From: Macrostomum lignano | Taxonomy: Eukaryota | Assembly (NCBI GenBank): GCA_002269645.1 | Contig: NIVC01002156.1 | Coordinates: forward strand, 62,001-126,000 | DNA length: 64,000 bases | Direction of reading: 5' to 3' | Shown here: one piece after another, positions 2,561 to 31,789 of the stretch | Layout: the number at the start of each line of letters is the position of its first letter | Numbering within the stretch: the first letter of the stretch is position 1 | Notes under the pieces: model-generated | Database searches by the model: none | Told to the model about the DNA's origin: nothing | What the model saw: only the letters and a program-made list of their open reading frames with translations | Position numbers and translations under genes: made by a program

Positions 2561-2594
<34 letters not shown>

Positions 2595-13398: not shown

Positions 13399-13757
13399 GG
13401 GGCCGTAGCCCAGCGGTAGCGCAGCTGCTCTGGTGTGCCAGCGACCCAGGCTCGATTCCAAGTGCAGCCACATTAATTTGGGGCTGAATTGGAATTTCGG
13501 CTTGGCTCGCTTGTGCAATTAACGGCCTTGAGAGCCAACCCCCCAAGGCGCAGTGAAGTGTACATGCCTAACGATAATATAAAGTTAGGGCCGCTGTACA
13601 CTCCTGTGTGAGTGTGTGCCTGCGTAACGTATCCGCGCGCTTGTATGCCTGCTCAGGGGAGTCGGCGGAATGGGCAGTAATGCCTCTCGCCGGTTGTGTG
13701 CCAATGACGCTTAAATTGCGCCAGGGTGCACACAACCCCCCTGCCTCTAATAAAAAA
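13399..13757 (+). mobile_element. tRNA-derived SINE, copy 2 (intact Pol III head)
   Basis: A-box TAGCCCAGCGG (13406-13416); B-box-like GGCTCGATTCC (13449-13459); 3' stem GGTTGTGTGC (13692-13701)/GCACACAACC (13728-13737); tail TAATAAAAAA. Confidence 0.85.
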
Positions 13758-14311
13758 GGCCAATTTAAACAGATAAGGAAATTAAAGTTCTGGGACTATA
13801 AAACCGAGCAAATGTACATTCATTTAAGAGCTGTTGTTGGTTCTCGTCAACTTAAGGAATAAGGGCGAGGGTTTTTATTACCCCCAATGTACATTACATG
13901 CTTGTATATTGGAGATTAATTGCAAGATAAAAACAAGTGTACAACGTATCTTGGGTTGTTGGTAAGACATAATAATTAGGCTTAATGCGATTTATTTTAA
14001 GTTTTAGTGGGTGTTTAATTTTACAAATGAAAGTAATTAAACTTGTGCATCAAAAGTTATTGGATGGCTTTCAGTGTACATTAATGCAATCTACATAAGA
14101 GCATTTTATTTTACCGAAATACATGTACGTTAAGGACTTGAATCACAGACCATTCTAATAGATTGAAGTACGAACGCGAAAATGAAGAAAAACGCAATTT
14201 AATTTTCCTGACAAACGCTACAATTGATACTATAGCTATTGATAAATAGGAGCGCTAAATGCACACTTGTCACGGGATCCAAACGAATTTTTTTGTCTTA
14301 TCACTGTTTAT

Positions 14312-14670
14312 CAGTGGCGGCGCAGGGGGGGGGGGGGGGGGGGCGGGCTGCCCCCGGGTGACCACCCCTCACCACCCTCAGGGGGTGACCACCCACTTAA
14401 AAAAAATTGGTACTTTCGTCTTTACCATATTTTTTCAAAAGTGTGGTCACCCCATGGGGCATGGGGGTGGTCACCTGAGACCTCAGGGGGTGGTCACCCG
14501 GTAGGGCCTGTAGGCTGTAAGGGTGGTCACCCTTTGAGGGCGAACCGCGAACTGGGCCTGGGCGATAACGAATCCTAACGATTTTGGAAAGCTTTTTTTT
14601 TGATAATTTTTTCTGGGGGTGACCACCCAACCACCGCCCCCCCCCAGCTGGAGGTCCTGCGCCGCCACTG
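14312..14670. mobile_element. hAT-type MITE (359 bp, non-autonomous)
   Basis: Perfect 15-bp TIRs CAGTGGCGGCGCAGG/CCTGCGCCGCCACTG; perfect 8-bp TSD CTGTTTAT (14304-14311, 14671-14678); seven internal GGTGACCAC/GTGGTCACC motifs; no ORF. Confidence 0.9.
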
Positions 14671-15160
14671 CTGTTTATTATTGTACTTACAGTCCTGCTT
14701 GTAAACTTCACAGCTCGTCGTGTATAATGTCACAAATGCAAAGAGCACCATTCACTAGCATATTTGTCTTATATGCACTCTCTTTGGAAACTGTTTTTTA
14801 ATACTCGTAGTTGCAGATCTTAGTATAGTCTAGAAATTAATTACATAACTCTAATGTCTAATGTTGCTAATATAAAATAGACAGAAGATACAATTGTTAG
14901 ATAAAAGTTTGTTTGCTTGTTTGCGTTCTAAGTCTAGGGAAAATACTTTTGGGCGTTATTAGATATTCCTGAGTGGGACCATCGACAAAGTGTTGCGCTG
15001 TTACGCAGTCTCAAGTACCACAAAATGAATAGCTACTCACAAATGTCCCATATACTCTTATGTCTAGTAATTTATATAAACCTGTTTCGACTAATCATTG
15101 GTATAAATTATCAAAAACTATAGTTATTCTTGCTTGCTGTTTTAAGGATTTTTCGTCAGA

Positions 15161-15400
15161 CCATCCACCTCGTTTCGCGTCCTTGGGGAAGCCCCAGTTT
15201 ATTGGCTAATAGATTTTCAATCCATCCACCCCTCACTCCGCGTCCTTGGGGAAACCCCAGTTTATTGGCTAAAAGATTTTCGATCTTCCAACTATCATCC
15301 TCACTCCGCGTCCTTGGGGAAACCCCAGTTTATTGGCTAAAGGATTTTCCATCGTTCTATCCACAATGCTCCGCTTCAGAAGCCCCGGTTGCTTAGCTAA
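15161..15400. repeat. 3 copies (plus a decayed fourth) of a ~62-69-bp unit with core CGCGTCCTTGGGGAA(A/G)CCCCAGTTTATTGGCTAA
   Basis: Core starts near 15177, 15239 and 15308. Confidence 0.85.
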
Positions 15401-15818: not shown

Positions 15819-16019
15819 GCCCGCCACAGCTATTAGACATGATCGACACAGAGAAAGGTCAAACTGCCCTACACAAGGCTAGCTGGTATCAGCGAAGGCA
15901 GATCTGTCATCTGTTGGTGCAGGCGGGAGCCAGTCTGACCATTACAGATTTCTCCGGCCTGACGCCGAGACAGCAGGCGCAGCGGGCTGAGGACAGTGAG
16001 CTGGCACTGTGGCTTGAGA
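15819..16019 (+). CDS. DGKZ: DGK exon: ankyrin repeats (C-terminal part)
   Basis: TTCAG| (G)PPQLLDMIDTEKGQTALHKASWYQRRQICHLLVQAGASLTITDFSGLTPRQQAQRAEDSELALWLE A|GTGAGT. Confidence 0.92.
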
Positions 16020-16094
16020 GTGAGTCAAAAATGACCCCCATCATGAGCAAGTCGGAAGGGTCCTACCTGTTCAATTCTAAATGCAATAATGTGA

Positions 16095-18365
16095 TATTAT
16101 CTATGGCCTGCTACCCCAACCCCATTCTTATTATTTATGGCCTGCTACCCCAACCCCATTCTTATTATCTATGGCCTGCTACCCCACTCCCCATTCTTAT
16201 TATCTATGGCCTGCTACCCCACTCCCCATTCTTATTATCTATGGCCTGCTACCCCACTCCCATTCTTATTATCTATGGCCTGCTACCCCAACCCCCATTC
16301 TTATTATCTATGGCCTGCTACCCCACTCCCCATTCTTATTATCTATGGCCTGCTACCCCACTCCCCATTCTTATTATCTATGGCCTGCTACCCCACTCCC
16401 CATTCTTATTATCTATGGCCTGCTACCCCACTCCCCATTCTTATTATCTATGGCCTGCTACCCCACTCCCCATTCTTATTATCTATGGCCTGCTACCCCA
16501 ACCCCCATTCTTATTATCTATGGCCTGCTACCCCAACCCCCATTCTTATTATCTATGGCTTGCTACCCCAACCCCCATTCTTATTATCTATGGCCTGCTA
16601 CCCCACTCCCCATTCTTATTATCTATGGCCTGCTACCCCACTCCCCATTCTTATTATCTATGGCCTGCTACCCCACTCCCCATTCTTATTATCTATGGCC
16701 TGCTACCCCACCCCCATTCTTATTATCTATGGCCTGCTACCCCACTCCCCATTCTTATTATCTATGGCCTGCTACCCCACTCCCCATTCTTATTATCTAT
16801 GGCCTGCTACCCCACTCCCCATTCTTATTATCTATGGCCTGCTACCCCACTCCCCATTCTTATTATCTATGGCCTGCTACCCCACTCCCCATTCTTATTA
16901 TCTATGGCCTGCTACCCCACTCCCCATTCTTATTATCTATGGCCTGCTACCCCACTCCCCATTCTTATTATCTATGGCCTGCTACCCCAACCCCCATTCT
17001 TATTATCTATGGCCTGCTACCCCACTCCCCATTCTTATTATCTATGGCCTGCTACCCCACTCCCCATTCTTATTATCTATGGCCTGCTACCCCAACCCCC
17101 ATTCTTATTATCTATGGCCTGCTACCCCACTCCCCATTCTTATTATCTATGGCCTGCTACCCCACTTCCCATTCTTATTATCTATGGCCTGCTACCCCAA
17201 CCCCATTCTTATTATCTATGGCCTGCTACCCCAACCCCCATTCTTATTATCTATGGCTTGCTACCCCAACCCCCATTCTTATTATCTATGGCCTGCTACC
17301 CCAACCCCCATTCTTATTATCTACGGCTTGCTACCCCACTCCCCATTCTTATTATCTATGGCCTGCTACCCCACTCCCCATTCTTATTATCTATGGCCTG
17401 CTACCCCAACCCCCATTCTTATTATCTATGGCCTGCTACCCCACTCCCCATTCTTATTATCTATGGCCTGCTAGCCCAACCCCCATTCTTATTATCTAAG
17501 GCCTGCTACCCCAACCCCCATTCTTATTATCTATGGCCTGCTACCCCAACCCCCATTCTTATTATCTATGGCCTGCTACCCCACTCCCCATTCTTATTAT
17601 CTATGGCCTGCTACCCCACTCCCCATTCTTATTATCTATGGCCTGCTACCCCACTCCCCATTCTTATTATCTATGGCCTGCTACCCCACTCCCCATTCTT
17701 ATTATCTATGGCTTGCTACCCCAACCCCCATTCTTATTATCTATGGCCTGCTACCCCACTCCCATTCTTATTATCTATGGCCTGCTACCCCAACCCCCCA
17801 ATCTTATTATCTATGGCCTGCTACCCCACTCCCCATTCTTATTATCTATGGCTTGCTACCCCAACCCCCATTCTTATTATCTATGGCCTGCTACCCCAAC
17901 CCCCATTCTTATTATCTATGGCCTGCTACCCCAACCCCCATTCTTATTATCTATGGCCTGCTACCCCACTCCCCATTCTTATTATCTATGGCCTGCTACC
18001 CCACTCCCCATTCTTATTATCTATGGCCTGCTACCCCACTCCCCATTCTTATTATCTATGGCCTGCTACCCCACTCCCCATTCTTATTATCTATGGCCTG
18101 CTACCCCACCCCCATTCTTATTATCTATGGCCTGCTACCCCAACCCCCATTCTTATTATCTATGGCCTGCTACCCCACTCCCCATTCTCATTATCTATGG
18201 CCTGCTACCCCACTCCCCATTCTTATTATCTATGGCCTGCTACCCCACCCCATTCTTATTATCTATGGCCTGCTACCCCAACCCCCCAATCTTATTATCT
18301 ATGGCCTGCTACCCCACTCCCCATTCTTATTATCTATGGCTTGCTACCCCAACCCCCATTCTTAT
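16095..18365. repeat. 35-bp minisatellite CATTCTTATTATCTATGGCCTGCTACCCCA(C/A)(T/C)CCC, left part, ~65 copies
   Basis: Direct inspection; continues after the LTR element at 26821. Confidence 0.97.
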
Positions 18366-19191
18366 TGTCATGAATGTGTTATGACAATGTGCTCTTTGCT
18401 TAGTTGCTGCACCGGGCCAGTGGGCCGTCCTCTCCCCCTCCCCCCTCCTTAGATATTTTCTGACTCACTCACCTGCACTTCTGCGCGTGCGTACCCCTCC
18501 CCTCCCTGCCTAGACCTTTTCTGTTGAGTCAACCCCCCCATGCTCTGCGTGCGACCCCCCCCTGTGCGACCCCGCCCCATTATTTTGTTAGCTTTGCTGC
18601 CCCGCCCCTGTTTGTGATTGGCTGCCAGTCCCAGTCTGCCGTGCTGCGCCCCGGCGATTGGCTGGTACAGCTCATGCGTTGCCTTGGCTGATGTCTAAGC
18701 CCCCTTTTCTGCCTTTATCCCGCGCCCTCGACCCCCAGTTTGCTGCCTATTTATTCGGCCCCCTTGAGACCCCATTCTCGTCGTCTTCGTGGCTCCTCGG
18801 CGATTGTGCCAGCGTTGGTTGCTGAATTGCTATTCCTCGCAGAATTGCTAGACAAATATATAAGTAAAGAATATCGAGATCACCACTGCTCTGACGGCGC
18901 TGGTTCTTGTACGACTGAAATCGCGGCTGGTAAGCCTTCCAATTCGTACGTCATTTGGGTCTGCATCTGTACTAGGCACCTTAGAGGGATTAAGTGCGTC
19001 GTACGCCGGTCCCACCCCAAGCAGCTCTGCGTCGTACGCGAGTCTGTAGGCTGTCGTGCGTCGTACGCTCGAGCAGCCTAGTCCCGACGGACACCGCGTC
19101 GTACGCGTGTCAGTGGAGGACCGCAGCCAGGGTCAGTACACGAACCCGGGTCTGGGAAAGGGGCACGAAAGGACCGAGCCCCATCATCACA
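18366..19191 (+). repeat. 5' LTR (826 bp)
   Basis: TGTCATGAAT...CCATCATCACA. By eye it differs from the 3' LTR only by one substitution (T18861 vs C26490) and two 1-bp poly-C indels. Confidence 0.97.
18570..18868 (+). promoter_or_regulatory. Candidate LTR promoter elements: two GC boxes, two inverted CCAAT boxes, TATA-like TATATAA and AGTAAA hexamer
   Basis: CCCCGCCCC at 18570-18578 and 18600-18608; ATTGG at 18617-18621 and 18657-18661; TATATAA at 18857-18863; AGTAAA at 18863-18868. Motif match only. Confidence 0.4.
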
Positions 19192-19194
19192 AAT

Positions 19195-19212
19195 TGGCAT
19201 CCTTGGTGGGAC
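19195..19212 (+). promoter_or_regulatory. Primer-binding site (PBS)
   Basis: TGGCATCCTTGGTGGGAC, 3 nt after the 5' LTR. Its reverse complement GTCCCACCAAGGATGCCA has the form of a tRNA 3' end (T-stem, acceptor, G discriminator, CCA). tRNA-Arg is a guess. Confidence 0.8.
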
Positions 19213-19299
19213 CCTGCGCTGTGGAAGACTAAGCAAGGAAGAAAGCTCGAGGCGCGGAATATTGTGAGAAATTAAGGTTAGAAACTGTGACGCCGTGGT

Positions 19300-20355
19300 A
19301 TGGATGCTGGAGGTGCTGCTGGAGGTGCTGCTGGAGGTGCGGCTGGGGGTGCGGCTGGAGGTGCTGCTGGAGGTGCTGCTGGAGCCTTTGGTGTTAATGA
19401 TCTGGTCGCCGCCTTGACTGCCCAGATTCAGCAGAACATGCAGCAAGCGGGTGCCCTCAGGATTCAGAGGCCGGTGAAGTATGCTCCAGGAATGAATTTC
19501 GTGAAGTGGTTGAGGCTCTTCGTAGCTTATTGCGATGCCATGCAGATTCCGATGCAGAATCGGCGCGCTCAGTTGCTCAGCAATCTAGACTTCAGCACAT
19601 TCCAAGTTGTCGACAACATGAACCTTGGGGACGACTTGCAGTTCGAAGAATTTACCCAGGCCTTGAGGGATAGGTTCACTATGCACCGTACCGTCGTCGA
19701 CTACCGCACAGAACTGAGCAATAGAGAGCAGAGCGAGAAGGAGTCGGTAGAAGATTTCTCTGAAGCTGTGATTGAGTTGGTCGCAAACGCCTTTCCTGAT
19801 GCGCCTGCCGATGTGCGCGATGATCTTGCGAAAGAGCGATTTATGCGAGGCGTCCGTGCGGGGGTGGCTGTGCGGGAGCGATTGTACATGAGCCAGCCGG
19901 AGACCTTAGCAGACGCGATGCGTCTAGTGCATCAGCTGGAAGCGGCGGTTAGGGCAAGTCACGGTCCACCAGGTCAGGGATCAAAAAGAGCTACCGTCTG
20001 TGCTGTCACAGCTGAGACTAGAAATGAGGCTTCCGAAAGCAGTGAGGTCGAGATGCTTCGAAAACAGCTTGCGGCCATGGAGATGCGAATGAAAGAGATG
20101 GAGGAGCGGAGGTCTGGAGAAGCGGAAGAGCCGACCCCGGTGAGTCGGAAGGCTGTGCAGTGTTTTTCGTGTCGAGAGTGGGGCCATATCTCATCAAAGT
20201 GTCCCAAGAAAACCAGCCAGACAAGTGGAAACGGGAAATCGCCAGTACGATGTCACAAGTGCAACGGTGAAGGCCACCTATCCTTCAAGTGTCCGAAGTC
20301 GGGAAACGGGCCGAGGGGACCGACCGGGGAGAGTCGGGACCCTGCCAGGAAGTGA
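19300..20355 (+). CDS. gag: Gag: (GGAA)6 N-terminus, capsid-like domain, two CCHC zinc knuckles
   Basis: CFSCREWGHISSKC and CHKCNGEGHLSFKC; first ORF after the PBS. Confidence 0.92.
   Translation: MDAGGAAGGAAGGAAGGAAGGAAGGAAGAFGVNDLVAALTAQIQQNMQQAGALRIQRPVKYAPGMNFVKWLRLFVAYCDAMQIPMQNRRAQLLSNLDFSTFQVVDNMNLGDDLQFEEFTQALRDRFTMHRTVVDYRTELSNREQSEKESVEDFSEAVIELVANAFPDAPADVRDDLAKERFMRGVRAGVAVRERLYMSQPETLADAMRLVHQLEAAVRASHGPPGQGSKRATVCAVTAETRNEASESSEVEMLRKQLAAMEMRMKEMEERRSGEAEEPTPVSRKAVQCFSCREWGHISSKCPKKTSQTSGNGKSPVRCHKCNGEGHLSFKCPKSGNGPRGPTGESRDPARK
20301..20307 (+). promoter_or_regulatory. -1 programmed ribosomal frameshift heptamer G_GGA_AAC (gag to pol)
   Basis: X_XXY_YYZ pattern correctly phased in the gag frame, inside the gag/pro overlap; pro is in the -1 frame. 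Confidence 0.8.
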
Positions 20356-21408
20356 AGTCTCCCAGGGGCGAGGAACCGGTGTTGCTCACTAACTCTGTAA
20401 ATAAATCCAAGTGCGTCTCTGGTGATGGGAATTCAAAGAGCAACCTGGTTCATGAGGCGTGTTCGTCGGTATCAACGGAGCCTCTGACAGTTTTTATTTC
20501 CGGTGCGGTTTCCGGCAAGCCAGTGGCTCTGCTGTTAGACAGTGGTGCGAGTGTGTCAGTGCTGAGCTGTGATGTTTTCCTGAGGCTGCCGCAAGAGGTG
20601 AGGGAGAGACTGACTGCAATGGACGGTTCCCTTTCAACGGCCAATGGAGGTGCGATGAGGATGAGAGGCTGCATTGTGCTGGACGTGGAGATTGGCGGCG
20701 AGCGGTGGTCAGCGAATTTCTTCGTAGTGGACGGATTGCGTTATGATGTCATTCTCGGGTCCGAATTTTTCAAACAGCATCGTTGCGTCATCAACTATTC
20801 GGAGTTTGTCTTTCGAGTGGGCGATGTTAGAGTTCCGATACGGCAGAAAGGCGAGCTGCCCGTGGTGTGTCGAATCAAAGCCGAGACAACGGTATTTCTG
20901 GAACCGGCGCAAGAAGTGGTCATGCCAGCCAGGGTAGAGAAAAAGGGCGCAAGAAACTGCGGATCGGTCGGCATAACGGAAGAAAAGCCGGTGAAGGCCG
21001 CTGAGAAGGATTTGGCGATGGCTCGAGCTCTGGTAGCGCCCGGTGTGGATGGACGGCTGCCGATGAGATTGCTGAATACGTCCAGTTGTAGGAAGAGGGT
21101 CAAGAAAGGAGAGACGATTGGCTGGTTTATTCCTTTGGAACCGAACGGAGGTATCAACGTGGTGCGCTTGGACGACGACGTAGAGGCCAAGAATGAAGCG
21201 GAGGCATGGGACCCGATCGAAGAATTCCGCGAGTGGGGTTCATGTGGCCTGTCGGAGGAGGAGGAAGCCGACTTCAGGGAGCTGATTTCCCAACATCGGG
21301 CTGTCTTTGCTAAGGACTCCAAGGATCTCGGCTGTACGACGGTGATGAAGCACGAGATCGACACTGGAGATGCCAGGCCTGTGAAAGAAGCGGCGAGGCG
21401 GATTCCCC
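20301..21408 (+). CDS. pol: Pol segment 1: aspartic protease and linker (ORF 20289-21509)
   Basis: VALLLDSGASVSVL (DSG at 20538-20546) and YDVILGSEFF. The frame breaks at CCCC 21405-21408. Confidence 0.9.
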
Positions 21409-23345
21409 GTACCTGCGGCAGGAAGTGGACAAGGAGTTGGATGACTTGCTGGAAGCTGGGAGAATCAGCGAGGTTCAGTCCCCATGGTGCTCTCCGGTGG
21501 TGTGCGTGAAAAAGAAGGACGGTTCCCTGAGGTTCTGTTGTGACTACCGGAAACTGAATGAAGTGACCAAGAAGGATGCAGTGCCGTTGCCCAGGACAGA
21601 TGACCTGTTGGAGAGCCTAGGCGGTGCCAAGATTTTTTCGACCATGGACATGCAGTCGGGATACTGGCAGATGGCGGTGGAACCCAGCGACAGACTGAAG
21701 ACGGCCTTTGGCGTTTCACACCGGGTACAGCAGTACGCCTGGAACGTTATGCCATTTGGATTGACAAATGCACCGGCTTCATTCAGCCGGCTAATGAATG
21801 TGGTGTTGGGGAAGTTGTGCTGGAAGACGTGTTTGGTGTATCTGGACGACCTGCTAGTGTGGTCACGAACGGTAGAAGAGCACCTGGAACGGTTGCAAAC
21901 GGTTTTTCGACGGTTGCGAGCAGCGAACATCAAACTGAAGCCGAAGAAGTGCGCATTCCTGCTGAAGTCAGTGACCTTCCTGGGACACGTAGTGTCAGCT
22001 GATGGGATCGCCACGAGTCCAGAAAAGATTGCCGAAATTCGTGACTGGCCAACTCCGAGGAATGTGAAGGAAGTAAGGTCATTCCTGGGACTGTGCGGGT
22101 ATTACCGGCAATTCATCGCAGATTTTTCCCGCATTGCTGAGCCGATGCTGCGACGGACCCGACATGATTGCCCGTGGAGCTGGGATGAGGAGTGTCAAGC
22201 CGCATTCGAGGCCCTGAAGGAAAGGTTGCAGGGATCTGAGGTCATGGCGTTTCCAAACTTTGCGGAGGACGCTGGAGAATTCGTTTTAGACACAGACGGT
22301 AGCACAAAAGAAGGAATTGGCGCTGTGCTTTCGCAGGTGCAGAAAGATGGGAGTGAGAAGGTAATAGCTTACGGAAGCAGGACGTTGTCGCGAGAAGAAC
22401 GGAATTACTGCACGACACGAGTCGAGTTGCTGGCCGTGGTGTTTTTCGTACAGAAGTTTCGTTATTACCTGATGGGGCGAGAGTTTCTAGTGCGCACCGA
22501 TCACAGCAGCTTGAAGTGGCTGCATTCGCTGCGGGACGTAGAAGGACAACTGGCCAGATGGCTGGAACTCTTGGCTCCGTACAGGTATCGCATCGAACAT
22601 CGTCCGGGAGTGAAACATCAACACGCGGACGCTCTCTCCAGGAAGCCACGTCGGCGCCATCAAGGAAGCGAGAGTTGTCCTGGATGTGCACAAGAGCAGA
22701 TCGGCGTGAACGCGTTGGGATTGCAGAAGTGGACCTCGGAGGAGATCAGAGAGAGCCAGAAGATGGACAGCGACATTCGTCAGGCGATGGAGCTGCTGGC
22801 TCACGGCGACGGAGAGATAACCGAAGAGCATTTGCGGCGCATATCACCGACGGCAAGGAGGATTGTCGAAAGACGTCGTGACCTTGAGGTGTCGGACAGT
22901 GAGGTGTTGCTGTGTCATACGGCCAGTAGACGTCAGCCGCAAGTGGTGTTGCCACGGAATATGCTGAGAGCGGTGCTGGAAGAAGCTCATGGTGGACGGA
23001 GTGGAGGGCACGTTGGGATTTTCAAGACCAAGGAGAAGGTGCGGCAATCGTTTTGGAGGCCGGGACTTGGCCGCGAGGTCGAAGAGCACGTAAAAGCCTG
23101 TTTGGACTGCACCAAGGCCAAAGCTGGCAAGAAACCAATTGCACCGATGGAGCCGATTCCGAGTTCAAGCCCATTCGATATCGTGATGACGGACGTCATC
23201 GGGCCGCTGCCACGGAGCAAGAAAGGAAACTTCTACATCCTCACGGTGCAAGATGCGTTCTCAAAGTGGCCTGACGCTTATGCCATCCGGAACCAGAAGG
23301 CGGCAACGATCGCAAGGGTGCTATTCGAACGCTGGATTGCAATCA
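21409..23345 (+). CDS. pol: Pol segment 2: reverse transcriptase, RNase H, integrase zinc finger and first part of the core (ORF 21425-23431)
   Basis: LRFCCDYRKLN, MPFGLTNAP, YLDD (21839-21850), VLDTDGS, ELLAVV, TDHSSL, HGGRSGGH...CLDC, DVIGPLP, DAFSKW. Confidence 0.95.
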
Positions 23346-24495
23346 CGGGTGCCCCCGGGTACTTCACTCAGACCAAGGAAGGAACTTTGAGTCGGGGATC
23401 ATCAGGAAGCTGTGCGAGCTGTTGGGTGTGAAGAAGACCAGGACGAGCGCCTACCACCCAAGTGGCAACGGACAGGTGGAACGATTTAATGGGTTCCTGA
23501 AGAACAGTTTGCGCTCGTATCTGGTACAGAAGGGTCAGAACGCCTGGGAGGAGTACCTGCCAAGTGCATTGATGGCTTATCGATCGACGGTCCAGGCGTC
23601 CACCGGTTACACGCCCTACTACATGCTGCATGGTCAGGAGATGCCGCTGGGATTCGAACCAGAGGACCTTAGGCGAAAGACGGACAGCTATCCCTTGTTT
23701 GTGCAAGAGATTCAGCAGAACCTGCTTCATGCCCATGAACACGTTCGAGAAGGGCGCGAGACGGTTCAGCGACGCCAGAAAATGAACTACGATCGGAAAG
23801 TGAAGGGCAAGGCGATTCAGAAGGGCGACTCTGTCTTGCTGTACTATCCGTGCTTGGAGATGGGAGAGAAAAGCAAATTCCATATCAACTGGCGCGGCCC
23901 AGTGAAGGTCCTGGAGAAGCTGTCAGATGCGTTGTATCGAGTGCAGGATCCGACACAGCCGCAGAAGACCAAGGTGGTGCACTTCAACAATCTCCGGCCG
24001 GTTCAGGTTCAGACGGAGGCGGCAGACGATCAAGAGACAGGAGAGGAAATTGGGAGGGCCAGTTTGGGAAAAACCAGGCCGCGACGTAGTAATTCCGCTG
24101 CTGGACGAAGCCGAAGGCAGAGAGTGCAACGGGGCGAGACCCAGAGGTGGACCGCAGCGCGAGGGCCGCAGGACCAGGAATCCGAGCAGGAAGATGAAGA
24201 GTTTGAAGATCTTCAGCTGCGGTTTCAAGATCCAAGAGATCACGCTCCGCCGGACACCCGAAATCTGGCCGAGGACCGTGAGCCCGGACCTGAGCGTCCA
24301 GAAGCAGACGATGACGAAGAAGAGCACTTTGATGAGGCGCGGTACGACGAGGAGCAAAACGAAGAGGATGAGGCAGAGCCGAACGACGCCAACGTACCCG
24401 AGCAAGAAGTGAGGACGGCACAGGAGGAAGCAGGGCGACCAAGACGTCTGCGGCGACCGCCGGATCGGTTTGGGGTCCCGGTGTACTACTACTGA
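23346..24495 (+). CDS. pol: Pol segment 3: rest of integrase core, GPY/F region and acidic tail (ORF 23422-24495)
   Basis: After a 1-nt shift near 23338-23357: VLHSDQGRNFES...TSAYHPSGNGQVERFN, WRGP, VVHFNNLRP, terminal RRPPDRF; stop at 24493-24495. No chromodomain fused. Confidence 0.92.
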
Positions 24496-24593
24496 AGAAG
24501 GGTCCGGTGTACGGCGCTTGGATAGCCAAGGGGAAGGGAGGTACATGTCGTGCGTGTCTCATTGCTCATCGGAGTTAGGCCGGACTGTTACAG

Positions 24594-25580
24594 ATGGCGG
24601 ACCTCTACGAGTGTCTTGGAGTGCAGCTGTGGGCGTCTGCGGCACAGATTCGGAAAGCGTTCTACGGTCGAGCACGCGAACTGCACCCTGACAAGAGCGC
24701 AACAGAGGAGACGCGGAAGAGATTCCAGGAGTGCGAAGAGGCGTACCGAATACTGTCGTGTCCGTTCCTTAGAAAGCTGTACGATATCTTTGGAAATGCT
24801 GTTCGTGACCGGGATGAGATGCTTCGGCTCGCAGAAGGGATGTTAGAGGATGAAGACATGCCCGACGATCTCCGAGAAGAGATAGAAAGACTACAAGAGA
24901 GCGACCGATTAGCTGAGGAGGCGTACGAGAGAGAACAGGCGAGGAGGGATGAGGAGCACGTCAAGATGGAGGCAAGTGAGGAGGCCTCAGACGATGAGCA
25001 GGACGAAGAGATGAACGAGGCGAGTGAGACACTGCCGGAGGAGTACGAGGTCGAGAAGGTCTTAGGAGTACGAGTCACGGAGCGAGGAGCGGAGTATCTG
25101 CTGCAGTGGGCCGGTGTAGAGGAGCTTGAGACGTCATGGGAAGCGGAGGAAGATTGTGCCGGATGTAGAAACCTGATTGAAGAATATCTGCAGAGAGCGT
25201 ACCGGCTTCAGACAAGACCGTGCCGACCAGTGACCGTCGCGGAACTGGAGAACGTAGGACCCAGTCGGAAGAAACTGCACCAGGCAATGCGGAAGGGCGA
25301 CCCGTGGGGCATCTTTGAGGTGCTGCTAGCCCTGAAGGGGAAGTGCGCCACTGCCTCGGTGGATTTCAAGGAATTCGGTCCGGAGTTGATGCTGCAGATC
25401 CTGGGCTACTTGGAGCGAGACGGTCGCAAGTATCCGGGGCACGGAGTTCGTCGGTGGAGTCGCCAAGCGTGTCAAGCTGTCTACATGTCGGTGATGGTGA
25501 TGTTCCCGCTGTTTGACCTGCGACGCCAGGGCTTGGTCCTGGGTGCCCTCCGTAGGCTGTGGGATTCGTGCTCTGACTGA
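24594..25580 (+). CDS. Accessory ORF3 (328 aa): DnaJ J-domain + acidic/coiled linker + chromodomain + unknown C-terminal domain
   Basis: J-domain DLYECLGV...IRKAFYGRARELHPDK...RFQECEEAYRILS...RKLYD (HPD at 24684-24692). Chromodomain EEYEVEKVL...EYLLQWAG...TSWEAEEDC..CRNLIEEY (25038-25196). Intact intron-less ORF inside the LTRs. Confidence 0.9.
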   Translation: MADLYECLGVQLWASAAQIRKAFYGRARELHPDKSATEETRKRFQECEEAYRILSCPFLRKLYDIFGNAVRDRDEMLRLAEGMLEDEDMPDDLREEIERLQESDRLAEEAYEREQARRDEEHVKMEASEEASDDEQDEEMNEASETLPEEYEVEKVLGVRVTERGAEYLLQWAGVEELETSWEAEEDCAGCRNLIEEYLQRAYRLQTRPCRPVTVAELENVGPSRKKLHQAMRKGDPWGIFEVLLALKGKCATASVDFKEFGPELMLQILGYLERDGRKYPGHGVRRWSRQACQAVYMSVMVMFPLFDLRRQGLVLGALRRLWDSCSD

Positions 25581-25984
25581 GGCTATGTCTTCCTAGGGAC
25601 TTTGGGGCTAGGGACTTTGCAGTGCAGACCCAGGGACAGCGGAGCGGAGGTGGACCGGCCTTAACGGGTGCTGACGGAGCGACACGGCTGTGCAGCAACC
25701 GCAGGACTCGACGACCAGCGCAGAGCGACCAGAGCAACCGGCGACAGTAGCGACAGGGAGACGAGGCACCAGAGCGACGGCCGTACTCGGCGGGATGCAG
25801 GGAAGCAGTGCTAGTATTACTTGTGAGGGTAAATGTTTGACGGTTTCATTTTTTTGTTTTTTGTTCGAACTAGTTGCCATGCGAGTCCAAAATATTTTTC
25901 AAATGCGGTTTGTTCCTCTGTTCAATTTTTTTGTTATAGTAGCATCATTTCAATATTCGACTTTTCGAACTCGAACTTTTGTCT

Positions 25985-25996
25985 AGGGGGAGGGAG
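25985..25996 (+). promoter_or_regulatory. Polypurine tract AGGGGGAGGGAG
   Basis: Directly abuts the TG start of the 3' LTR. Confidence 0.92.
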
Positions 25997-26820
25997 TGTC
26001 ATGAATGTGTTATGACAATGTGCTCTTTGCTTAGTTGCTGCACCGGGCCAGTGGGCCGTCCTCTCCCCCTCCCCCCTCCTTAGATATTTTCTGACTCACT
26101 CACCTGCACTTCTGCGCGTGCGTACCCCTCCCCTCCCTGCCTAGACCTTTTCTGTTGAGTCAACCCCCCATGCTCTGCGTGCGACCCCCCCCTGTGCGAC
26201 CCCGCCCCATTATTTTGTTAGCTTTGCTGCCCCGCCCCTGTTTGTGATTGGCTGCCAGTCCCAGTCTGCCGTGCTGCGCCCCGGCGATTGGCTGGTACAG
26301 CTCATGCGTTGCCTTGGCTGATGTCTAAGCCCCCTTTTCTGCCTTTATCCCGCGCCCTCGACCCCCAGTTTGCTGCCTATTTATTCGGCCCCTTGAGACC
26401 CCATTCTCGTCGTCTTCGTGGCTCCTCGGCGATTGTGCCAGCGTTGGTTGCTGAATTGCTATTCCTCGCAGAATTGCTAGACAAATATACAAGTAAAGAA
26501 TATCGAGATCACCACTGCTCTGACGGCGCTGGTTCTTGTACGACTGAAATCGCGGCTGGTAAGCCTTCCAATTCGTACGTCATTTGGGTCTGCATCTGTA
26601 CTAGGCACCTTAGAGGGATTAAGTGCGTCGTACGCCGGTCCCACCCCAAGCAGCTCTGCGTCGTACGCGAGTCTGTAGGCTGTCGTGCGTCGTACGCTCG
26701 AGCAGCCTAGTCCCGACGGACACCGCGTCGTACGCGTGTCAGTGGAGGACCGCAGCCAGGGTCAGTACACGAACCCGGGTCTGGGAAAGGGGCACGAAAG
26801 GACCGAGCCCCATCATCACA
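25997..26820 (+). repeat. 3' LTR (824 bp)
   Basis: Direct repeat of 18366-19191. Confidence 0.97.
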
Positions 26821-27713
26821 TTATTATCTATGGCCTGCTAGCCCAACCCCCATTCTTATTATCTATGGCTTGCTACCCCAACCCCCATTCTTATTATCTA
26901 TGGCCTGCTACCCCACTCCCCATTCTTATTATCTATGGCCTGCTACCCCACTCCCCATTCTTATTATCTATGGCCTGCTATCCCACCCCCATTCTTATTA
27001 TCTATGGCCTGCTACCCCACTCCCCATTCTTATTATCCATGGCCTGCTACCCCACTCCCCATTCTTATTATCTATGGCCTGCTACCCCACTCCCCATTCT
27101 TATTATCTATGGCCTGCTACCCCACTCCCCATTCTTATTATCTATGGCTTGCTACCCCAACCCCCATTCTTATTATCTATGGCCTGCTACCCCACTCCCC
27201 ATTCTTATTATCTATGGCCTGCTACCCCACCCCCATTCTTATTATCTATGGCCTGCTACCCCACTCCCCATTCTTATTATCTATGGCCTGCTACCCCACT
27301 CCCCATTCTTATTATCTATGGCCTGCTACTCCACTCACTATTCTAATTATCCATGGCCTGCTACCCCACCCCATTCTTATTATCTATGGCCTGCTACCCC
27401 AACCCCCCAATCTTATTATCTATGGCCTGCTACCCCACTCCCCATTCTTATTATCTATGGCCTGCTACCCCACTCCCCATTCTTATTATCTATGGCCTGC
27501 TACCCCACCCCCATTCTTATTATCTATGGCCTGCTACTCCACCCCCATTCTTATTATTTATGGCCTGCTACTCCACTCCCCATTCTTATTATCTATGGCC
27601 TGCTACCCCAACCCCCATTCTTATTATCTATGGCCTGCTACCCCACTCCCCATTCTTATTATCTATGGCCTGCTACCCCACTCCCCATTCTTATTATCTA
27701 TGGCCTGCTACCC
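26821..27713. repeat. 35-bp minisatellite, right part, ~25 copies
   Basis: Same unit as 16095-18365; resumes in register after the TTAT duplication. Confidence 0.97.
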
Positions 27714-27770
27714 TTGCCAAAATGGTGCTATTTCTAGGAAAAGCAACAAAAACCGTTTTTCGTATTGCAG

Positions 27771-27823
27771 CTCAGGAGCACATGCAGCTGGTCAAGAAGG
27801 AGAACCAGGAGACTGAAGTCTGA
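27771..27823 (+). CDS. DGKZ: DGK terminal coding exon with class I PDZ-binding motif
   Basis: TATTGCAG|CT CAG GAG...GTC TGA gives (T)QEHMQLVKKENQETEV*, equivalent to the DGKZ end RQHYQMIQREDQETAV*. Phase 1 matches the donor at 16020. Confidence 0.92.
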
Positions 27824-28166
27824 TTTGCTAGTACATTTAATCGTTGTTGATTAATCGGCTTTTTTCTACCTATTTGAGTCCTTCGTGTCCTTGACGTCAT
27901 AGCCCTGACACTCTGGTATTACTGGCCGATACAAAAATCAAATCTTTTGAGATTTTCGGCTCAATAATATTCTAGGATATCATATAATTTTTTTCATTTT
28001 TATTCGAGCATTATTGTTTTATTTAGCATTGCACTATTTGCTGTGTTTGAGTTGCTTCCTCGGTTTCGGGAAATTCTTATTACTCTCAGATAGAACCATA
28101 TTTTATAGAGGTGAAGCTAAAATTCTGAGAGTAACTCTTACAATTGCTAATTAGACGTACAATTTG

Positions 28167-28930
28167 CCGTTGCTAAGCGGAATTCCCCGTTGCTAAGTGG
28201 AATTCCCCGTTGCTAAGCAGAACTCCACGTTGCTAAGTGGAATTCCCCGTTGCTAAGTGGAATTCCCCGTTGCTAAGCAGAACTCCCCGTTGCTAAGTGG
28301 AATTCGCCCTGTTGCTAAGTGAAATTCCCCGTTGCTAAGCAGAACTCCCTGTTGCTAAGACAAACTCGCCGTTACTAAGTAGACTTCTCCGTTACTAAGC
28401 CAAACCCTCATTGCCGAGCAGAACCGCCGTTACTAAGCCGAACTCCTCGTTGCTAAGCCAGACTACCGTTGCTAAGCCAAACTCCCGTTGCTAAGTAGAA
28501 TTATCCCTTGCTAAGCCGAACCCCCGTTACTAAGCTGAACTCCCCGTTACTAAGCCGAACCTTCCGTTGCTAAGCAGAACCCCCGTTGCTGAGCAGGACC
28601 CCCGTTGCTAGGTGGAACTCTCAGTTGCTAAGCAGAACCCCCGTTGCTAAGCCAAACTACCGTTGCTAAGCCAAACTCTCCGTTGCTAAATAGAATTCTC
28701 CGTTGCTAAATAGAATTCTCCGTTGCTAAGTAGAATTCTCCGTTGCTAAGTAGACTTCTCCGTTACTAAGCCGAACTCCCCGTTGCTAAGCCGAACTCCC
28801 CGTTGCTAAGCCAAACTCCCCGTTGCTAAGCCAAACTCCCCGTTGCTAAGCAGAAATTTTTATTGATTAACTAGTAGTCGTTGTTGCTAAGTGAAAATCC
28901 CGTTGCTAAACGAAGCTCCCAGTTGCGAAG
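28167..28930. repeat. Degenerate ~20-21-bp minisatellite with core CCGTT(G/A)CTAAG, ~37 copies
   Basis: Direct inspection. Confidence 0.9.
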
Positions 28931-29441
28931 CGCACTGGACTGATTGAAGGCCAGTTGTCATATCTGCTTGTTCCATTTCCTACATTTTTCTTTGACTTTT
29001 GCCAGATTCTGATTGTATTGTTACTAAATCTTTATCTGTAAATTATTTCGTGTGTTTTTTAGCTTTGTTGTCAGCTGTTTCTCAGTCGTTTTCTGAACTA
29101 GCTACTTAGCTTAGTAACCATGGACGAAAATTGTCGTAGTGAAGTGAAAATAATTATTTTGCTTTTATTTTAACAATACTTTGCTTGTATTATTATGTTT
29201 TTAAAAGAAATCATTGCGCGTGTAAGACTAGTTTCGTGTGCCACCCAATCACTGCAACTTTTTTAATGCACTGGTTTTAATGGATTTGCAGTTCTCAGCA
29301 GGATAAGGTATACTTATAGTTGTGAAAAAGCGTTTACATGTATCATGTTTCTTACCGCGCGGTTTTGCATTTATATTCTTTAACTACTGGACTTTATCAG
29401 GTCATACTTCTCTGAAAGTTCACGGCGAGCTCGAGCCCTTG

Positions 29442-30258
29442 CAGTAGTCAGGGGTCGCTTGCTATCGTTCTAGAAGTTTAGGGGTCGCTTGACCTCCCCC
29501 TCAGTAGTTCAGGGGTCGCTTGACCTCCCACTCAGTAGTTCAGGGGTCGCTTGACCTCCCCTTAGTAGTTCAGGGGTCGCTTGACCTCCCACTCAGTAGT
29601 TCAGGGGTCGCTTGACCTCCCCCTTAGTAGTTCAGGGGTCGCTTGACCTCCCACTCAGTAGTTCAGGGGTCGCTTGACCTCCCACTCAGTAGTTCAGGGG
29701 TCGCTTGACCTCCCACTCAGTAGTTCAAGGGTCGCTTGACCTCCCACTCAGTAGTTCAGGGGTCGCTTGACCTCCCCCTCAGTAGTTCAAGGGTCGCTTG
29801 ACCTCCCACTCAGTAGTTCAAGGGTCGCTTGACCTCCCCCTTAGTCCTTAGTAGTTCAGGGGTCGCTTGACCTCCCCCTTAGTAGTTCAAGGGTCGCTTG
29901 ACCTCCCACTCAGTAGTTCAGGGTCGCTTGACCTCCCACTCAGTAGTTCAGGGGTCGCTTGACCTCCCCCTCAGTAGTTCAAGGGTCGCTTGACCTCCCC
30001 CTCAGTAGTTCAAGGGTCGCTTGACCTCCCCCTTAGTCCTTAGTAGTTCAGGGGTCGCTTGACCTCCCACTCAGTAGTTCAGGGGTCGCTTGACCTCCCA
30101 CTCAGTAGTTCAAGGGTCGCTTGACCTCCTCCTTAGTCCTTAGTAGTTCAGGGGTCGCTTGACCTCCCCCTTAGTAGTTCAGGGGTCGCTTGTCCCCCTC
30201 TTAGTAGTTCAGGGGTCACAACCTCCCCAATAGTACAAGGGTCACTTGACCTCTCCCC
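29442..30258. repeat. 31-bp minisatellite TCAGTAGTTCA(G/A)GGGTCGCTTGACCTCCC(A/C)C, ~26 copies
   Basis: Direct inspection; some units carry a TTAGTCC micro-insertion. Confidence 0.95.
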
Positions 30259-31079
30259 CTTCCGAGTAAATTTGAATTATTGTGTGTAACTTTACAGGGT
30301 CAATAATCTAATATGTGCACTTTTATCGTTAGTGCACTGGCTCCTCTAGAATTTAAAAGTGCATTATTAGTCTGCACAGATAGTTTAGTAGGGTACCTAT
30401 TCCGCGTGTGTTAGCATTATTTAGAATTTTTATTGTGTGCAAATCACTAAATATTATTCCGTGCCATTGTAATGCAAATTGTAAGAGAATTATTTCTAAT
30501 CATGGCAATATTGTCAGACGTTTTTAAAAACCTAAATATTGACATTAATTTGTATTCACTTTGCCCAGTTCCAATTTCTCTTGGCAATTAATTTTTTGTA
30601 TTTGAAAGGGTTTCTATAAATATTTTACTGCGATAATTCTATTTATATCCGATATAAATTTATTGCAATCTTATTCATTTTTAACTCGTGTCTCACACAA
30701 CTGAGAGAGCAAATATTATTTTGTTATTTTTAATAACATTAAAAATATTTAATTGCGATTTTTAAACGGATTTTTATTAATAATAATAATAACTCTATAC
30801 TACTACTTCAGTGTGTCCGTATATTTTGCGAATATATATGCTTATATGGTTAATCAGCTGTCTGTAAAAGCGCTGACTGACCTGAGTTGACAGCTGTTGT
30901 GTTGCGCGTCTGGTCGCTTATTTTGAGAAACGAATTTAAACAAAATGTTTTCCTTGTCTCTCTTCATTTTTGTGAGGTTTTTCAGCTTGCAAACTGAATA
31001 TTAGCGGGGTTGTTTTACGATTTGGAAATGTCAAGCCTCTGAAAGTCACCTCTTCATGGCACAGTTTCTGGTGCGGGCG

Positions 31080-31329
31080 CCCCTGGTGCTAAAGCCCTTG
31101 GTGCTAAAGCCCCTGGTGCTAAAGCCCTTTGTGGTAAAGCCTTGGTGCTAAAGCCCCTGGTGCTAAAGCCCCTGGTGCTAAAGCCCCTGGTGCTAAAGCC
31201 CCTGGTGCTAAAGCCCCTGGTGCTAAAGCCCCTGGTGCTAAAGCCCCTGGTGCTGAAGCCCTGGTGCTAAAGCCCCTGGTGCTAAAGCCCTGGTGCTAAA
31301 GCCCCTGGTGCTGAAGCCCTGGTGCTAAG
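31080..31329. repeat. 15-bp minisatellite AAGCCCCTGGTGCTA, ~16 copies
   Basis: Direct inspection. Confidence 0.95.
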
Positions 31330-31789
31330 CGAAATCTGACAGAATCAATCAAACGTGTCCTGAGCTCAGCGCACAGAAAAACAAAGAAGTTTGGCAGTAA
31401 TGAGGGAGGCCCTGTCATATAGTAAAGAATCAATTACATTTGACTCGGCAGGGTCAAACAAAAAGAGTGCGCCCACCCTACAGTATGTTGTCCGATTCTG
31501 TTTAGCTATCAACCAGCTGCTTAGCTCGACTGCATGGGCGGTGCGATGACACATGCAGCGCGTGGGCGTATTTTTTTAGTGAGAAACTTCTCTCGCTTTC
31601 TTGCGTATAGATAAGATCCCATGCCTTCAGTGGTCATTTCTTCCCTGTAATTGACTGGTTGCACAGCTTGGCCATGTGCGTGGGAGGCTGGCACTTTGGG
31701 AGCTCTCTCAACAGCAGTGTCAACTTCATCCCATTCCTTTGATCCCCTCTTTGTCGCCTCCTTGTCTCAACTATCTTGTCTATCCCGTC

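What the first reader, a model, noticed from the sequence alone, without database searches (positions are those of the whole stretch)
24594..25580. Gypsy retrotransposon carries a stand-alone J-domain + chromodomain protein in the env position
Seen: an intact 328-aa intron-less ORF between the integrase stop (24495) and the PPT/3' LTR, in a different frame from pol. It has a four-helix J-domain with the HPD motif, an acidic linker, a chromodomain and a further ~125-aa domain. Established: HPD J-domains recruit and activate Hsp70. Chromoviruses carry their chromodomain fused to integrase, not in a separate ORF. Viral J-domains such as those of polyomavirus T antigens use Hsc70 to remodel host nuclear complexes. 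Inference: this could be an element-encoded chromatin-targeted Hsp70 co-chaperone that strips silencing complexes (HP1/PIWI/Polycomb) from the element, aids capsid or intasome disassembly, or guides integration. I know of no described LTR-retrotransposon accessory gene with this architecture, but I could not search databases.
Basis: partly seen in the sequence, partly recalled or inferred. Interest (0 to 1): 0.95.

Follow-up and report, generated by a model that had tools for sequence, protein, structure and literature searches.

The report
Flatworm retrotransposon encoding its own J-domain co-chaperone
A young Ty3/Gypsy retrotransposon of the flatworm Macrostomum lignano carries, after integrase, a third gene under purifying selection that encodes an Hsp70 co-chaperone (J-domain) with an HP1-like chromodomain, an accessory gene I could not find described for any LTR retrotransposon.

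Summary
The ORF at 24594-25580 (328 aa) lies inside an LTR retrotransposon (18366-26820) with 99.6% identical LTRs and a 4-bp target duplication. It sits between the integrase stop and the polypurine tract. Pfam finds a DnaJ domain (4.6e-16, HPD present) and a Chromo domain (1.4e-12).

The host is Macrostomum lignano. Two more full-length copies at other loci also keep ORF3 intact. A 76%-identical relative from another sample gives dN/dS 0.18.

More distant relatives (28-30% identity, colinear) also follow an integrase. Three have this context: a Logan contig, a gag-pol-J contig from a brackish-mat metagenome, and a further M. lignano gene model. Another M. lignano model has a related J-domain beside an integrase fragment. 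So a J-domain ORF3 is a lineage trait.

The conserved core is the J-domain plus an orphan helical C-terminal domain. The chromodomain is seen only in the window's family and its closest relative. It is closest to the HP1/Swi6 class but lacks the third aromatic cage residue.

A YAG directly precedes the ATG in three lineages, which suggests a spliced sub-genomic mRNA.

Function is inferred, not shown: Hsp70 recruitment to a client chosen by the C-terminal domain, with a chromatin tether in this family. I found no such gene in the literature searched.

The parts
16095..18365 (.). Host 35-nt satellite array, left flank of the insertion. It ends with the target duplication TTAT at 18362-18365.
   Evidence: TRF finds period 35, 65 copies. 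The flank is read.
18366..19191 (+). 5' LTR (826 nt, starts TG and ends CA)
   Evidence: Alignment of the two LTR regions shows 1 substitution and 2 one-base indels. Repeat families D5-D7.
19195..19213 (+). Primer-binding-site-like stretch that starts TGG, 3 nt after the LTR. This is inferred and was not matched to a tRNA.
   Evidence: Sequence read. No tRNA gene in the window to compare with.
19300..20355 (+). gag, one open frame of 351 aa with two CCHC zinc knuckles
   Evidence: zf-CCHC 2.4e-07; weak PNMA and Retrotrans_gag matches.
20289..24495 (+). pol (protease, RT, RNase H, integrase; no chromodomain). In this copy it is read in three frames: two frame changes within pol and no in-frame stop in the homologous stretches.
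   Evidence: Pfam on the separate reading-frame pieces. Frame counts.
24588..24593 (+). ttacag directly 5' of the ORF3 ATG; candidate 3' splice (or trans-splice) acceptor
   Evidence: The same YAG-then-ATG arrangement is in L003 and L006.
24594..25580 (+). ORF3, 328 aa, intact: J-domain, acidic linker, chromodomain, C-terminal helical domain
   Evidence: M. lignano proteins P0001 and P0004 are 99-100% identical.
24600..24785 (+). J-domain (residues 3-64); HPD codons at 24684-24692
   Evidence: Pfam DnaJ 4.6e-16. Ydj1, DnaJ and DNAJA/B J-domains at about 1e-10. Fold match at rmsd 0.9 A. HPD is invariant in 5 of 5 family members.
24786..25043 (+). Linker (residues 65-150). A short motif after the J-domain is shared with distant relatives, followed by a long acidic, helix-predicted stretch.
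25044..25196 (+). Chromodomain (residues 151-201), closest to the HP1/Swi6 class. Two of the three aromatic cage positions are kept; the third is Val.
   Evidence: Pfam Chromo 1.4e-12. Swi6 3.8e-10, CBX5 2.7e-09, and the residue alignment to Swi6.
25200..25577 (+). C-terminal domain (residues 203-328), predicted five-helix bundle, with no relatives outside this ORF3 family
   Evidence: pLDDT 73-81 over most of it. Searches found nothing outside the family. Colinear with P0033, P0035 and P0088.
25581..25985 (+). Non-coding stretch after ORF3. Copies L001 and L002 are about 150 nt longer here.
25986..25996 (+). Polypurine tract abutting the 3' LTR
25997..26820 (+). 3' LTR (824 nt)
26821..27713 (.). 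Same 35-nt satellite, right flank. It begins with the target duplication TTAT at 26821-26824.

Best explanation
ORF3 is a genuine accessory gene of a lineage of Ty3/Gypsy LTR retrotransposons in Macrostomum flatworms, and it is kept by purifying selection. It encodes a class-III (J-domain-only) Hsp70 co-chaperone.

Shown:
- The gene lies between integrase and the polypurine tract, inside a very young element.
- It is intact in three independent copies.
- dN/dS is 0.18 against a diverged relative.
- Colinear homologues follow an integrase in distant families.
- The HPD J-domain and the C-terminal helical domain are the conserved core.
- An HP1-like chromodomain with an acidic stretch sits between them in the window's family.

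Inferred:
- The J-domain docks on host Hsp70 and triggers ATP hydrolysis.
- The orphan C-terminal domain selects the client. This is most likely the element's own nucleoprotein complex (capsid or integrase-cDNA complex), which Hsp70 would help assemble, take apart or import.
- In this family the chromodomain ties that complex to chromatin. It would do in trans what the integrase-fused chromodomain does for chromoviruses, that is, bias where the element lands.
- The protein is probably made from a spliced or trans-spliced sub-genomic mRNA, because a YAG acceptor-like site directly abuts the ATG in three lineages.
For: - Domains and position.
- Host and copies: (98.6-99.1% identical full-length copies). 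Target duplications are TTAT, GCTT and CTTA. A fourth copy lies inside a MutS gene model.
- Selection: dN/dS 0.18 with dS 0.78; J 0.13, linker 0.31, chromo 0.13, C-terminal 0.15.
- No indel in ORF3 in any pair of copies, against 4-10 frame-disrupting indels per pair in pol.
- Lineage trait:
  - L006 has an integrase C-terminus (40% identical to the window's) followed by a J ORF that is 29% identical and colinear.
  - A metagenome contig has gag, an uninterrupted 1254-aa pol and a J ORF in that order.
  - M. lignano model P0088 has integrase followed by a full ORF3 homologue.
  - M. lignano model P0009 has J-domains beside an integrase fragment.
- J-domain quality: HPD invariant in 5 of 5, 20 of 70 columns invariant; fold match to Ydj1.
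- Chromodomain is closest to Swi6, CBX5 and HP1.
- YAG before the ATG. Trans-splicing is common in M. lignano: 38.8% of genes, with polycistronic precursors (PMC5730564).
- The NCBI gene models for ORF3 come from that genome's annotation. I assume, but did not check, that they derive from the paper's transcriptome-guided assembly.
- Insertion sites: the window copy sits inside a satellite, and L001 sits at the edge of a (CT)n array.
Against: - No direct evidence of protein, of splicing, of Hsp70 binding or of any client.
- The chromodomain lacks the third cage aromatic (Val here, Leu in P0002), so methyl-lysine reading is uncertain.
- The chromodomain is missing or unrecognisable in the other lineages, so chromatin tethering cannot be the ancestral role.
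- Two of three copies near tandem arrays is weak evidence in a genome with 15% simple and tandem repeats.
- The structure models are of modest confidence (mean pLDDT 56-60), and the chromodomain was not folded by them.
- Every genomic copy examined has pol in more than one frame, so none is shown to be autonomous. Part of this may be long-read assembly error.
Confidence: 0.65

Rival explanations
1. Anti-silencing factor. The chromodomain brings ORF3 to heterochromatin marks laid on element copies. The J-domain then makes Hsp70 dismantle HP1-, PIWI- or Polycomb-type repressor complexes, keeping the element transcribed.
For: - The chromodomain is closest to the HP1 class and is preceded by an acidic stretch.
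- A chromatin reader coupled to a J-protein and Hsp70 does act on the silencing state in Arabidopsis (MBD5/6-SILENZIO: PMC8616336; PMC10651127).
Against: - The conserved core of the family has no chromodomain.
- The third cage residue is aliphatic.
- The known reader-plus-J system promotes silencing rather than relieving it.
- No expression or localisation data are available.
Confidence: 0.15
2. Self-limiting or host-serving gene. ORF3 is kept because it dampens the element (for example by promoting compaction of its own copies, as SILENZIO does) or because the host has begun to use it. Selection would then act on ORF3 even in copies whose pol is broken.
For: - ORF3 has no indel in three copies, whereas gag plus pol carry about 18 indel events in 5.2 kb. 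This gives a Poisson chance of about 0.03 for none in 1 kb (my arithmetic on the counts).
- The SILENZIO precedent.
Against: - The indel contrast is marginal and may reflect homopolymer errors of long-read assemblies.
- Substitution rates in ORF3 (0.61%) are no lower than in pol (0.6-1.1%).
- The gene always lies inside LTR pairs and after an integrase, never as a solitary host locus.
Confidence: 0.1
3. Neutral passenger. A host J-protein gene was transduced once and is simply carried along without serving the element.
For: - LTR retrotransposons do pick up foreign ORFs (bdelloid rotifers, PMC5408684).
- A DnaJ plus Chromo protein exists in a non-transposon context (P0102).
Against: - dN/dS is 0.18 over dS 0.78 in every domain.
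- Colinear homologues at 28-36% identity sit in the same position in families whose integrases are only 40% identical.
- The best matches in the exhaustive search are 51-54% identical over the J-domain alone and 37% over the chromodomain, and none outside the family covers the whole protein. So there is no sign of a recently captured host gene.
Confidence: 0.04
4. Envelope substitute: ORF3 plays an env-like role in cell-to-cell spread.
For: Position only (between pol and the 3' LTR).
Against: - No envelope-type family comes up in Pfam.
- By eye I see no signal-peptide-like start and no long hydrophobic segment in the translation. This was not run through a predictor.
- The recognisable domains are a cytosolic or nuclear co-chaperone domain and a chromatin reader.
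Confidence: 0.01

Closest known systems
Chromoviruses (chromodomain-bearing Ty3/Gypsy elements)
   Same: A Ty3/Gypsy element that carries a chromodomain. By established knowledge, the chromoviral chromodomain directs integration to heterochromatin.
   Different: Here the integrase has no chromodomain. The chromodomain sits in a separate ORF fused to a J-domain. By sequence it is closest to HP1/Swi6 among solved structures. According to PMC12801592, M. lignano families fall in the Mag, CsRN1, Gmr1/Osvaldo and Mdg3 clades, not chromoviruses. I could not place this family myself.
Non-envelope ORF3s of LTR retrotransposons (bdelloid rotifer GDSL esterase and DEDDy exonuclease ORF3s, PMC5408684; orchid Ty3/Gypsy m6A-demethylase domain, PMC9289625)
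   Same: An extra, non-env gene between pol and the 3' LTR that is shared by related families.
   Different: The content is new: a J-domain co-chaperone with an orphan domain and, in one branch, a chromodomain. None of these papers mentions a J-domain (0 occurrences).
Virus-encoded J-domains (polyomavirus T antigens) and virus-encoded Hsp70 homologues (closteroviruses); from my own knowledge
   Same: A mobile genetic parasite that brings its own handle on the host Hsp70 machine.
   Different: No T antigen was among the 60 of 68 solved-structure matches shown. The J-domain here resembles cellular DnaJA/B-type J-domains. The element is a retrotransposon and the partner domains are different.
Arabidopsis MBD5/6-SILENZIO complex (PMC8616336, PMC10651127)
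   Same: A chromatin-mark reader coupled to a J-domain protein and Hsp70s, acting at transposons.
   Different: It is a host silencing complex of separate proteins. There is no sequence relationship beyond the J-domain, and the direction of effect may be opposite.
HP1 / Swi6 / CBX5 chromodomain proteins
   Same: Best sequence matches for residues 127-205, including the acidic run before the chromodomain.
   Different: No chromoshadow domain. The third cage aromatic is replaced by Val or Leu.
P0102, an unnamed 263-aa metagenomic protein with DnaJ then Chromo
   Same: The same order of the two Pfam domains, at 30% identity over residues 3-201.
   Different: It lies on a compact gene-dense contig with no gag or pol nearby. 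It ends right after the chromodomain, so it lacks the family's C-terminal domain.

Membership tests
Ty3/Gypsy (Metaviridae) LTR retrotransposon | Paired LTRs that start TG and end CA, flanked by a short target duplication | tested here: met
   826- and 824-nt LTRs, 99.6% identical, with the duplication TTAT. Copies L001 and L002 have GCTT and CTTA.
Ty3/Gypsy (Metaviridae) LTR retrotransposon | gag with CCHC knuckles; pol in the order PR-RT-RNase H-IN | tested here: met
   Pfam on the separate reading-frame pieces.
Ty3/Gypsy (Metaviridae) LTR retrotransposon | PBS next to the 5' LTR and PPT next to the 3' LTR | tested here: inconclusive
   An 11-nt purine tract abuts the 3' LTR. A stretch starting TGG lies 3 nt after the 5' LTR, but it was not matched to any tRNA.
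Chromovirus clade | Chromodomain fused to the C-terminus of integrase | tested here: not met
   The last pol piece has Integrase_p58_C/SH3 only and no Chromo match.
Chromovirus clade | RT/IN phylogeny inside the chromovirus clade | not tested
   No reference set could be obtained without typing sequences from memory. The published census places M. lignano families in other clades.
J-domain proteins (Hsp40), class III | J-domain fold with the HPD loop between helices II and III | tested here: met
   Pfam DnaJ 4.6e-16. Four helices. rmsd 0.9 A to Ydj1 J. HPD invariant in 5 of 5.
J-domain proteins (Hsp40), class III | No G/F region, zinc-finger or DnaJ C-terminal domains (these would make it class I or II) | tested here: met
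   Only DnaJ and Chromo were found by Pfam at E up to 0.1, plus one sub-threshold hit.
J-domain proteins (Hsp40), class III | Stimulates Hsp70 ATPase | not testable with these tools
   This is a biochemical property, inferred from the intact HPD only.
HP1-family methyl-lysine readers | Chromodomain | tested here: met
   Pfam Chromo 1.4e-12. Swi6, CBX5, CBX1, HP1 and Rhino at 4e-10 to 1e-6.
HP1-family methyl-lysine readers | Three-aromatic cage | tested here: not met
   In the alignment to Swi6 the first Tyr and the Trp are kept. The third aromatic position is Val, and Leu in P0002.
HP1-family methyl-lysine readers | Chromoshadow dimerisation domain | tested here: not met
   No Chromo_shadow match. 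The C-terminal domain is predicted to be all-helical.
Env-bearing Gypsy elements (errantivirus-like) | ORF3 is a membrane fusion glycoprotein | tested here: not met
   No envelope family in Pfam. The recognised domains are a co-chaperone domain and a chromatin reader.

The most novel reading that the evidence does not exclude
A retrotransposon lineage has evolved its own Hsp70 co-chaperone. In one branch this is fused to a chromatin reader that acts in trans to steer or protect the element on chromatin. This would be the first transposon-encoded J-protein. It occurs in an animal whose LTR elements are already known to plug into the heat-shock response (PMC12801592).
Probability: 0.35. Interest if true: 0.85.

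Novelty: new variant of a known kind. Interest (0 to 1): 0.72.

Why it matters
Accessory genes show what limits a retroelement in its host. A J-domain is a compact way to commandeer Hsp70. DNA tumour viruses use it, but I found no report of it for a retrotransposon.

Here the gene is old: several lineages at about 30% identity. It is under selection, and it sits in an experimentally tractable flatworm in which other LTR families are strongly heat-induced (PMC12801592).

If ORF3 couples Hsp70 to the element's particle or integration complex, it offers a defined entry point to how chaperones serve retroelement replication.

The branch with the chromodomain would be a natural contrast to chromoviruses, with the chromatin reader in trans rather than fused to integrase. 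It would also offer a paired comparison, with and without the chromodomain, inside one genome.

Tried and rejected
- **Heat-shock elements in the LTR.** None found. There were 3 one-mismatch hits in the whole window against 13 expected, and none lies in the element. So there is no sign that this family shares the heat-inducible promoters of PMC12801592.
- **Relatives of the C-terminal domain.**
  - A region-restricted search and a profile search without the J-domain returned only the family itself.
  - A PDB profile search returned noise.
  - Foldseek on the model returned J-domain matches only.
- **Structure prediction.** Two runs with 4-sequence alignments gave mean pLDDT 56 and 60. The chromodomain was not folded, so no structural claim is made for it.
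- **P0006 and P0039.** These are proteins with 6 and 2 tandem J-domains on an 809-kb metagenomic contig. The similarity is to the J-domain only, with no gag or pol nearby, so I do not count them as family members.
- **Supplementary tables of PMC12801592.** These might list domain structures of the 137 families, but they are not held.
- **Identity of the Logan samples.** SRR24204725 and SRR31628392 were not found in any paper. Only the JGI co-assembly could be traced, to a brackish microbial mat at Etang de Berre.
- **Clade placement of pol.** Not done.
- **First count of broken frames.** A count by long sense ORFs was polluted by spurious GC-rich ORFs. It was replaced by piece-wise tblastn and indel counts.
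Full report
**1. The observation**

- Pfam gives DnaJ at residues 3-64 (E 4.6e-16) and Chromo at residues 151-201 (E 1.4e-12). Both are well above the curated cut-offs.
- HPD is at residues 31-33.
- The stretch between the domains is very acidic, and about 125 residues follow the chromodomain.
- Overlapping ORFs on either strand have no family match.
- No Rfam family and no tRNA lie in the neighbourhood.

**2. The element**

- The LTRs (18366-19191 and 25997-26820) differ by one substitution and two one-base homopolymer indels. They start TG and end CA.
- The target duplication is TTAT. The two flanks join into one unit of a 35-nt host satellite (16095-18365 and 26821-27713), so the element inserted into a satellite array.
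- An 11-nt purine tract abuts the 3' LTR. A stretch starting TGG lies 3 nt after the 5' LTR.
- gag (19300-20355) is one open frame with two CCHC knuckles.
- pol (20289-24495) has protease, RT, RNase H, integrase zinc-binding, core and p58-C/SH3 domains, and no chromodomain.
- In this copy pol is read in three frames: two frame changes and no in-frame stop. ORF3 is in yet another frame relative to the last pol piece.
- One of the two frame changes is shared by all three copies compared, so it may be a native feature of the family. Both LTR indels are homopolymer errors, so part of the frame breakage may be assembly error. I cannot tell which.

**3. Host and copies**

- ORF3 is 99-100% identical to two Macrostomum lignano proteins, PAA78660.1 and PAA83624.1. 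An 80-aa fragment, PAA71432.1, belongs to the same cluster.
- Their loci, L001 and L002, hold full-length copies that are 98.6% and 99.1% identical to the window element. They have different flanks and their own 4-bp duplications, GCTT and CTTA. These are three independent, recent insertions.
- A fourth copy is swallowed by a 2698-aa MutS gene model. Its domain order is zinc knuckle, integrase, DnaJ, Chromo, all between MutS domains.
- Breaks relative to the window copy:
  - L001: 4 frame-disrupting indels in pol and 3 in-frame stops; gag has only in-frame indels.
  - L002: 10 frame-disrupting indels in pol and 4 in gag, plus 1 stop in gag.
  - ORF3 has no indel and no stop in any copy.
- With about 18 indel events in 5.2 kb of gag plus pol, none in 1 kb has a Poisson chance of about 0.03. 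This is suggestive only.

**4. Selection**

A 1134-nt Logan contig (L003, protein P0002) carries an ORF3 that is 76% identical in protein and 80% in DNA. Against it dN/dS is 0.18 with dS 0.78. By part the values are J 0.13, linker 0.31, chromodomain 0.13 and C-terminal domain 0.15. This rules out neutral decay. P0002 stops about 45 residues earlier than ORF3, but that tail is conserved in more distant relatives.

**5. The wider family**

An exhaustive phmmer scan of 1.84 billion representatives found only P0002 as a close full-length relative. It also found several weaker, informative hits.
- **P0033 (L006).** An integrase C-terminus that is 40% identical to the window's, then 245 nt, then a 309-aa ORF. 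The ORF is 29% identical to ORF3 and colinear over the J-domain, the post-J motif and the whole C-terminal domain. It has no Pfam chromodomain.
- **P0035.** It lies on a 7-kb contig of a brackish-mat metagenome (Etang de Berre, a DNA co-assembly). The gene order is a 178-aa ORF, a gag with a faint CCHC match, an uninterrupted 1254-aa PR-RT-RH-IN pol, then the 264-aa J ORF. P0035 is 39% identical to P0033 over its full length and lacks the middle segment altogether.
- **P0088.** A chimeric 3375-aa M. lignano model that holds an integrase C-terminus followed by a full ORF3 homologue, 33% identical to P0033.
- **P0009.** Another chimeric M. lignano model. It has J-domains 51% identical to ORF3's J-domain, next to an integrase zinc-binding domain 48% identical to the window's.

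The gag-pol-J ORF arrangement is therefore a trait of a diversified lineage. At least three divergent branches occur in M. lignano itself.

Across five members HPD is invariant. Twenty of 70 J columns and 7 of 123 C-terminal columns are invariant. Under the chromodomain columns the distant members share only 2-9 of 54 residues. Whether the chromodomain was gained in the window's branch or lost elsewhere cannot be decided without a rooted tree.

**6. The domains**

- **J-domain.** It resembles cellular DnaJA/B-type J-domains (Ydj1, Thermus DnaJ2, DNAJA2, DNAJB9; about 1e-10) and superposes on them. No G/F, zinc-finger or DnaJ C-terminal domain is present, so it is class III.
- **Chromodomain.** Its best matches are Swi6, CBX5, CBX1, Drosophila HP1 and Rhino. 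In the Swi6 alignment the first Tyr and the Trp of the aromatic cage are kept. The third aromatic is Val here and Leu in P0002. There is no chromoshadow domain.
- **C-terminal domain.** It is predicted as a five-helix bundle with pLDDT of roughly 75. It has no relative outside the family by sequence or fold.

**7. Expression route (inferred)**

The ATG of ORF3 is directly preceded by ttacag in the window, ttttag in L003 and ctgtag in L006. The upstream spacers are otherwise unalignable. A 3' splice acceptor at the start codon fits two routes. One is a sub-genomic mRNA spliced from the leader, where two GT candidates lie at 19264 and 19277. The other is spliced-leader trans-splicing, which affects 38.8% of M. 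lignano genes and resolves polycistronic precursors (PMC5730564). The NCBI gene models for ORF3 come from that genome's annotation. I assume they derive from the paper's transcriptome-guided assembly, which would be indirect evidence of transcription, but I did not check this.

**8. Mechanism**

What is shown is a selected, element-borne, HPD-bearing J-protein with a private second domain. The rest is inferred.
- The J-domain recruits and fires host Hsp70.
- The private domain chooses the client, most simply the element's own particle or integration complex.
- The chromodomain, where present, adds a chromatin tether comparable in purpose to the integrase-fused chromodomain of chromoviruses.

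The window copy sits in a satellite and L001 at the edge of a (CT)n array, while L002 is in unique sequence. Against a 15% repeat background this is weak support.

Rivals are an anti-silencing role, a self-limiting or host-serving role (compare Arabidopsis MBD5/6-SILENZIO), a neutral passenger, and an env substitute. The last two are disfavoured.

**9. Novelty**

Full-text searches combining retrotransposon or LTR terms with J-domain, DnaJ, chromodomain, ORF3 or co-chaperone found no description of such a gene. The recent census of M. lignano LTR elements does not mention DnaJ, J-domain or chromodomain in its text. Non-env ORF3s as a class are known (PMC5408684). I therefore rate this as a new variant of a known kind.

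**10. Conduct**

- Copies were obtained only through look-ups of ORF3 relatives returned by the search tools. Nothing was fetched by accession.
- One slip. While working I reasoned from the ORF table about where pol changes frame and in which domain. No such place is given in the notes, in script output or in this report, and nothing was deleted.
- The contig is not human.

Noticed in passing
window 31790-61452: A tandem array of about 29.7 kb with a 26/52-nt period (over 1100 copies, 91% matches). It has extreme strand asymmetry: GC skew about -0.43 and AT skew about -0.69.
   Followed up: no
window 15839-18373 and 26685-27823: Long 'ORFs' (up to 844 aa) that are artefacts of the stop-free 35-nt satellite hosting the insertion.
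   Followed up: partly
window 1-15400, 28100-31400, 62800-64000: Outside the element, at least a dozen further tandem arrays (periods 4, 15, 17, 20, 22, 24, 31, 32, 39/161, 68) are spread through the window. No ORF of 120 aa or more lies between about 3200 and 15300, and no Rfam or tRNA hit was found.
   Followed up: no
L001 4667-4793; L002 4721-4800; window about 19300-19340: A 12-nt tandem repeat at the start of gag varies in copy number between copies: 10.6 in L001, 6.7 in L002, and fewer in the window.
   Followed up: no
window 25581-25985 compared with L001 and L002: The non-coding stretch after ORF3 is about 150 nt longer in L001 and L002 than in the window copy.
   Followed up: no
window 19170-19191 and 26800-26820 compared with L001 and L002: Both LTRs of the window copy lack a short (about 8-nt) segment near their 3' end that both LTRs of L001 and L002 have. 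This is a sub-lineage marker copied into both LTRs, as expected from replication.
   Followed up: partly
P0005, P0009, P0088 (M. lignano gene models in UniRef/MetaClust): Older M. lignano gene models fuse retrotransposon pieces, including J ORFs, with host genes. One merges MutS domains, an element copy and a ubiquitin-conjugating domain.
   Followed up: partly
L004 794-1585 (P0102): A 263-aa DnaJ plus Chromo protein on a compact, gene-dense metagenomic contig with no transposon genes nearby. This is an independent occurrence of the two-domain order.
   Followed up: partly
L005 10001-12040 and 16473-17966 (P0006, P0039): Proteins with six and two tandem J-domains on an 809-kb metagenomic contig whose other genes have no Pfam match. 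The origin is unknown.
   Followed up: no
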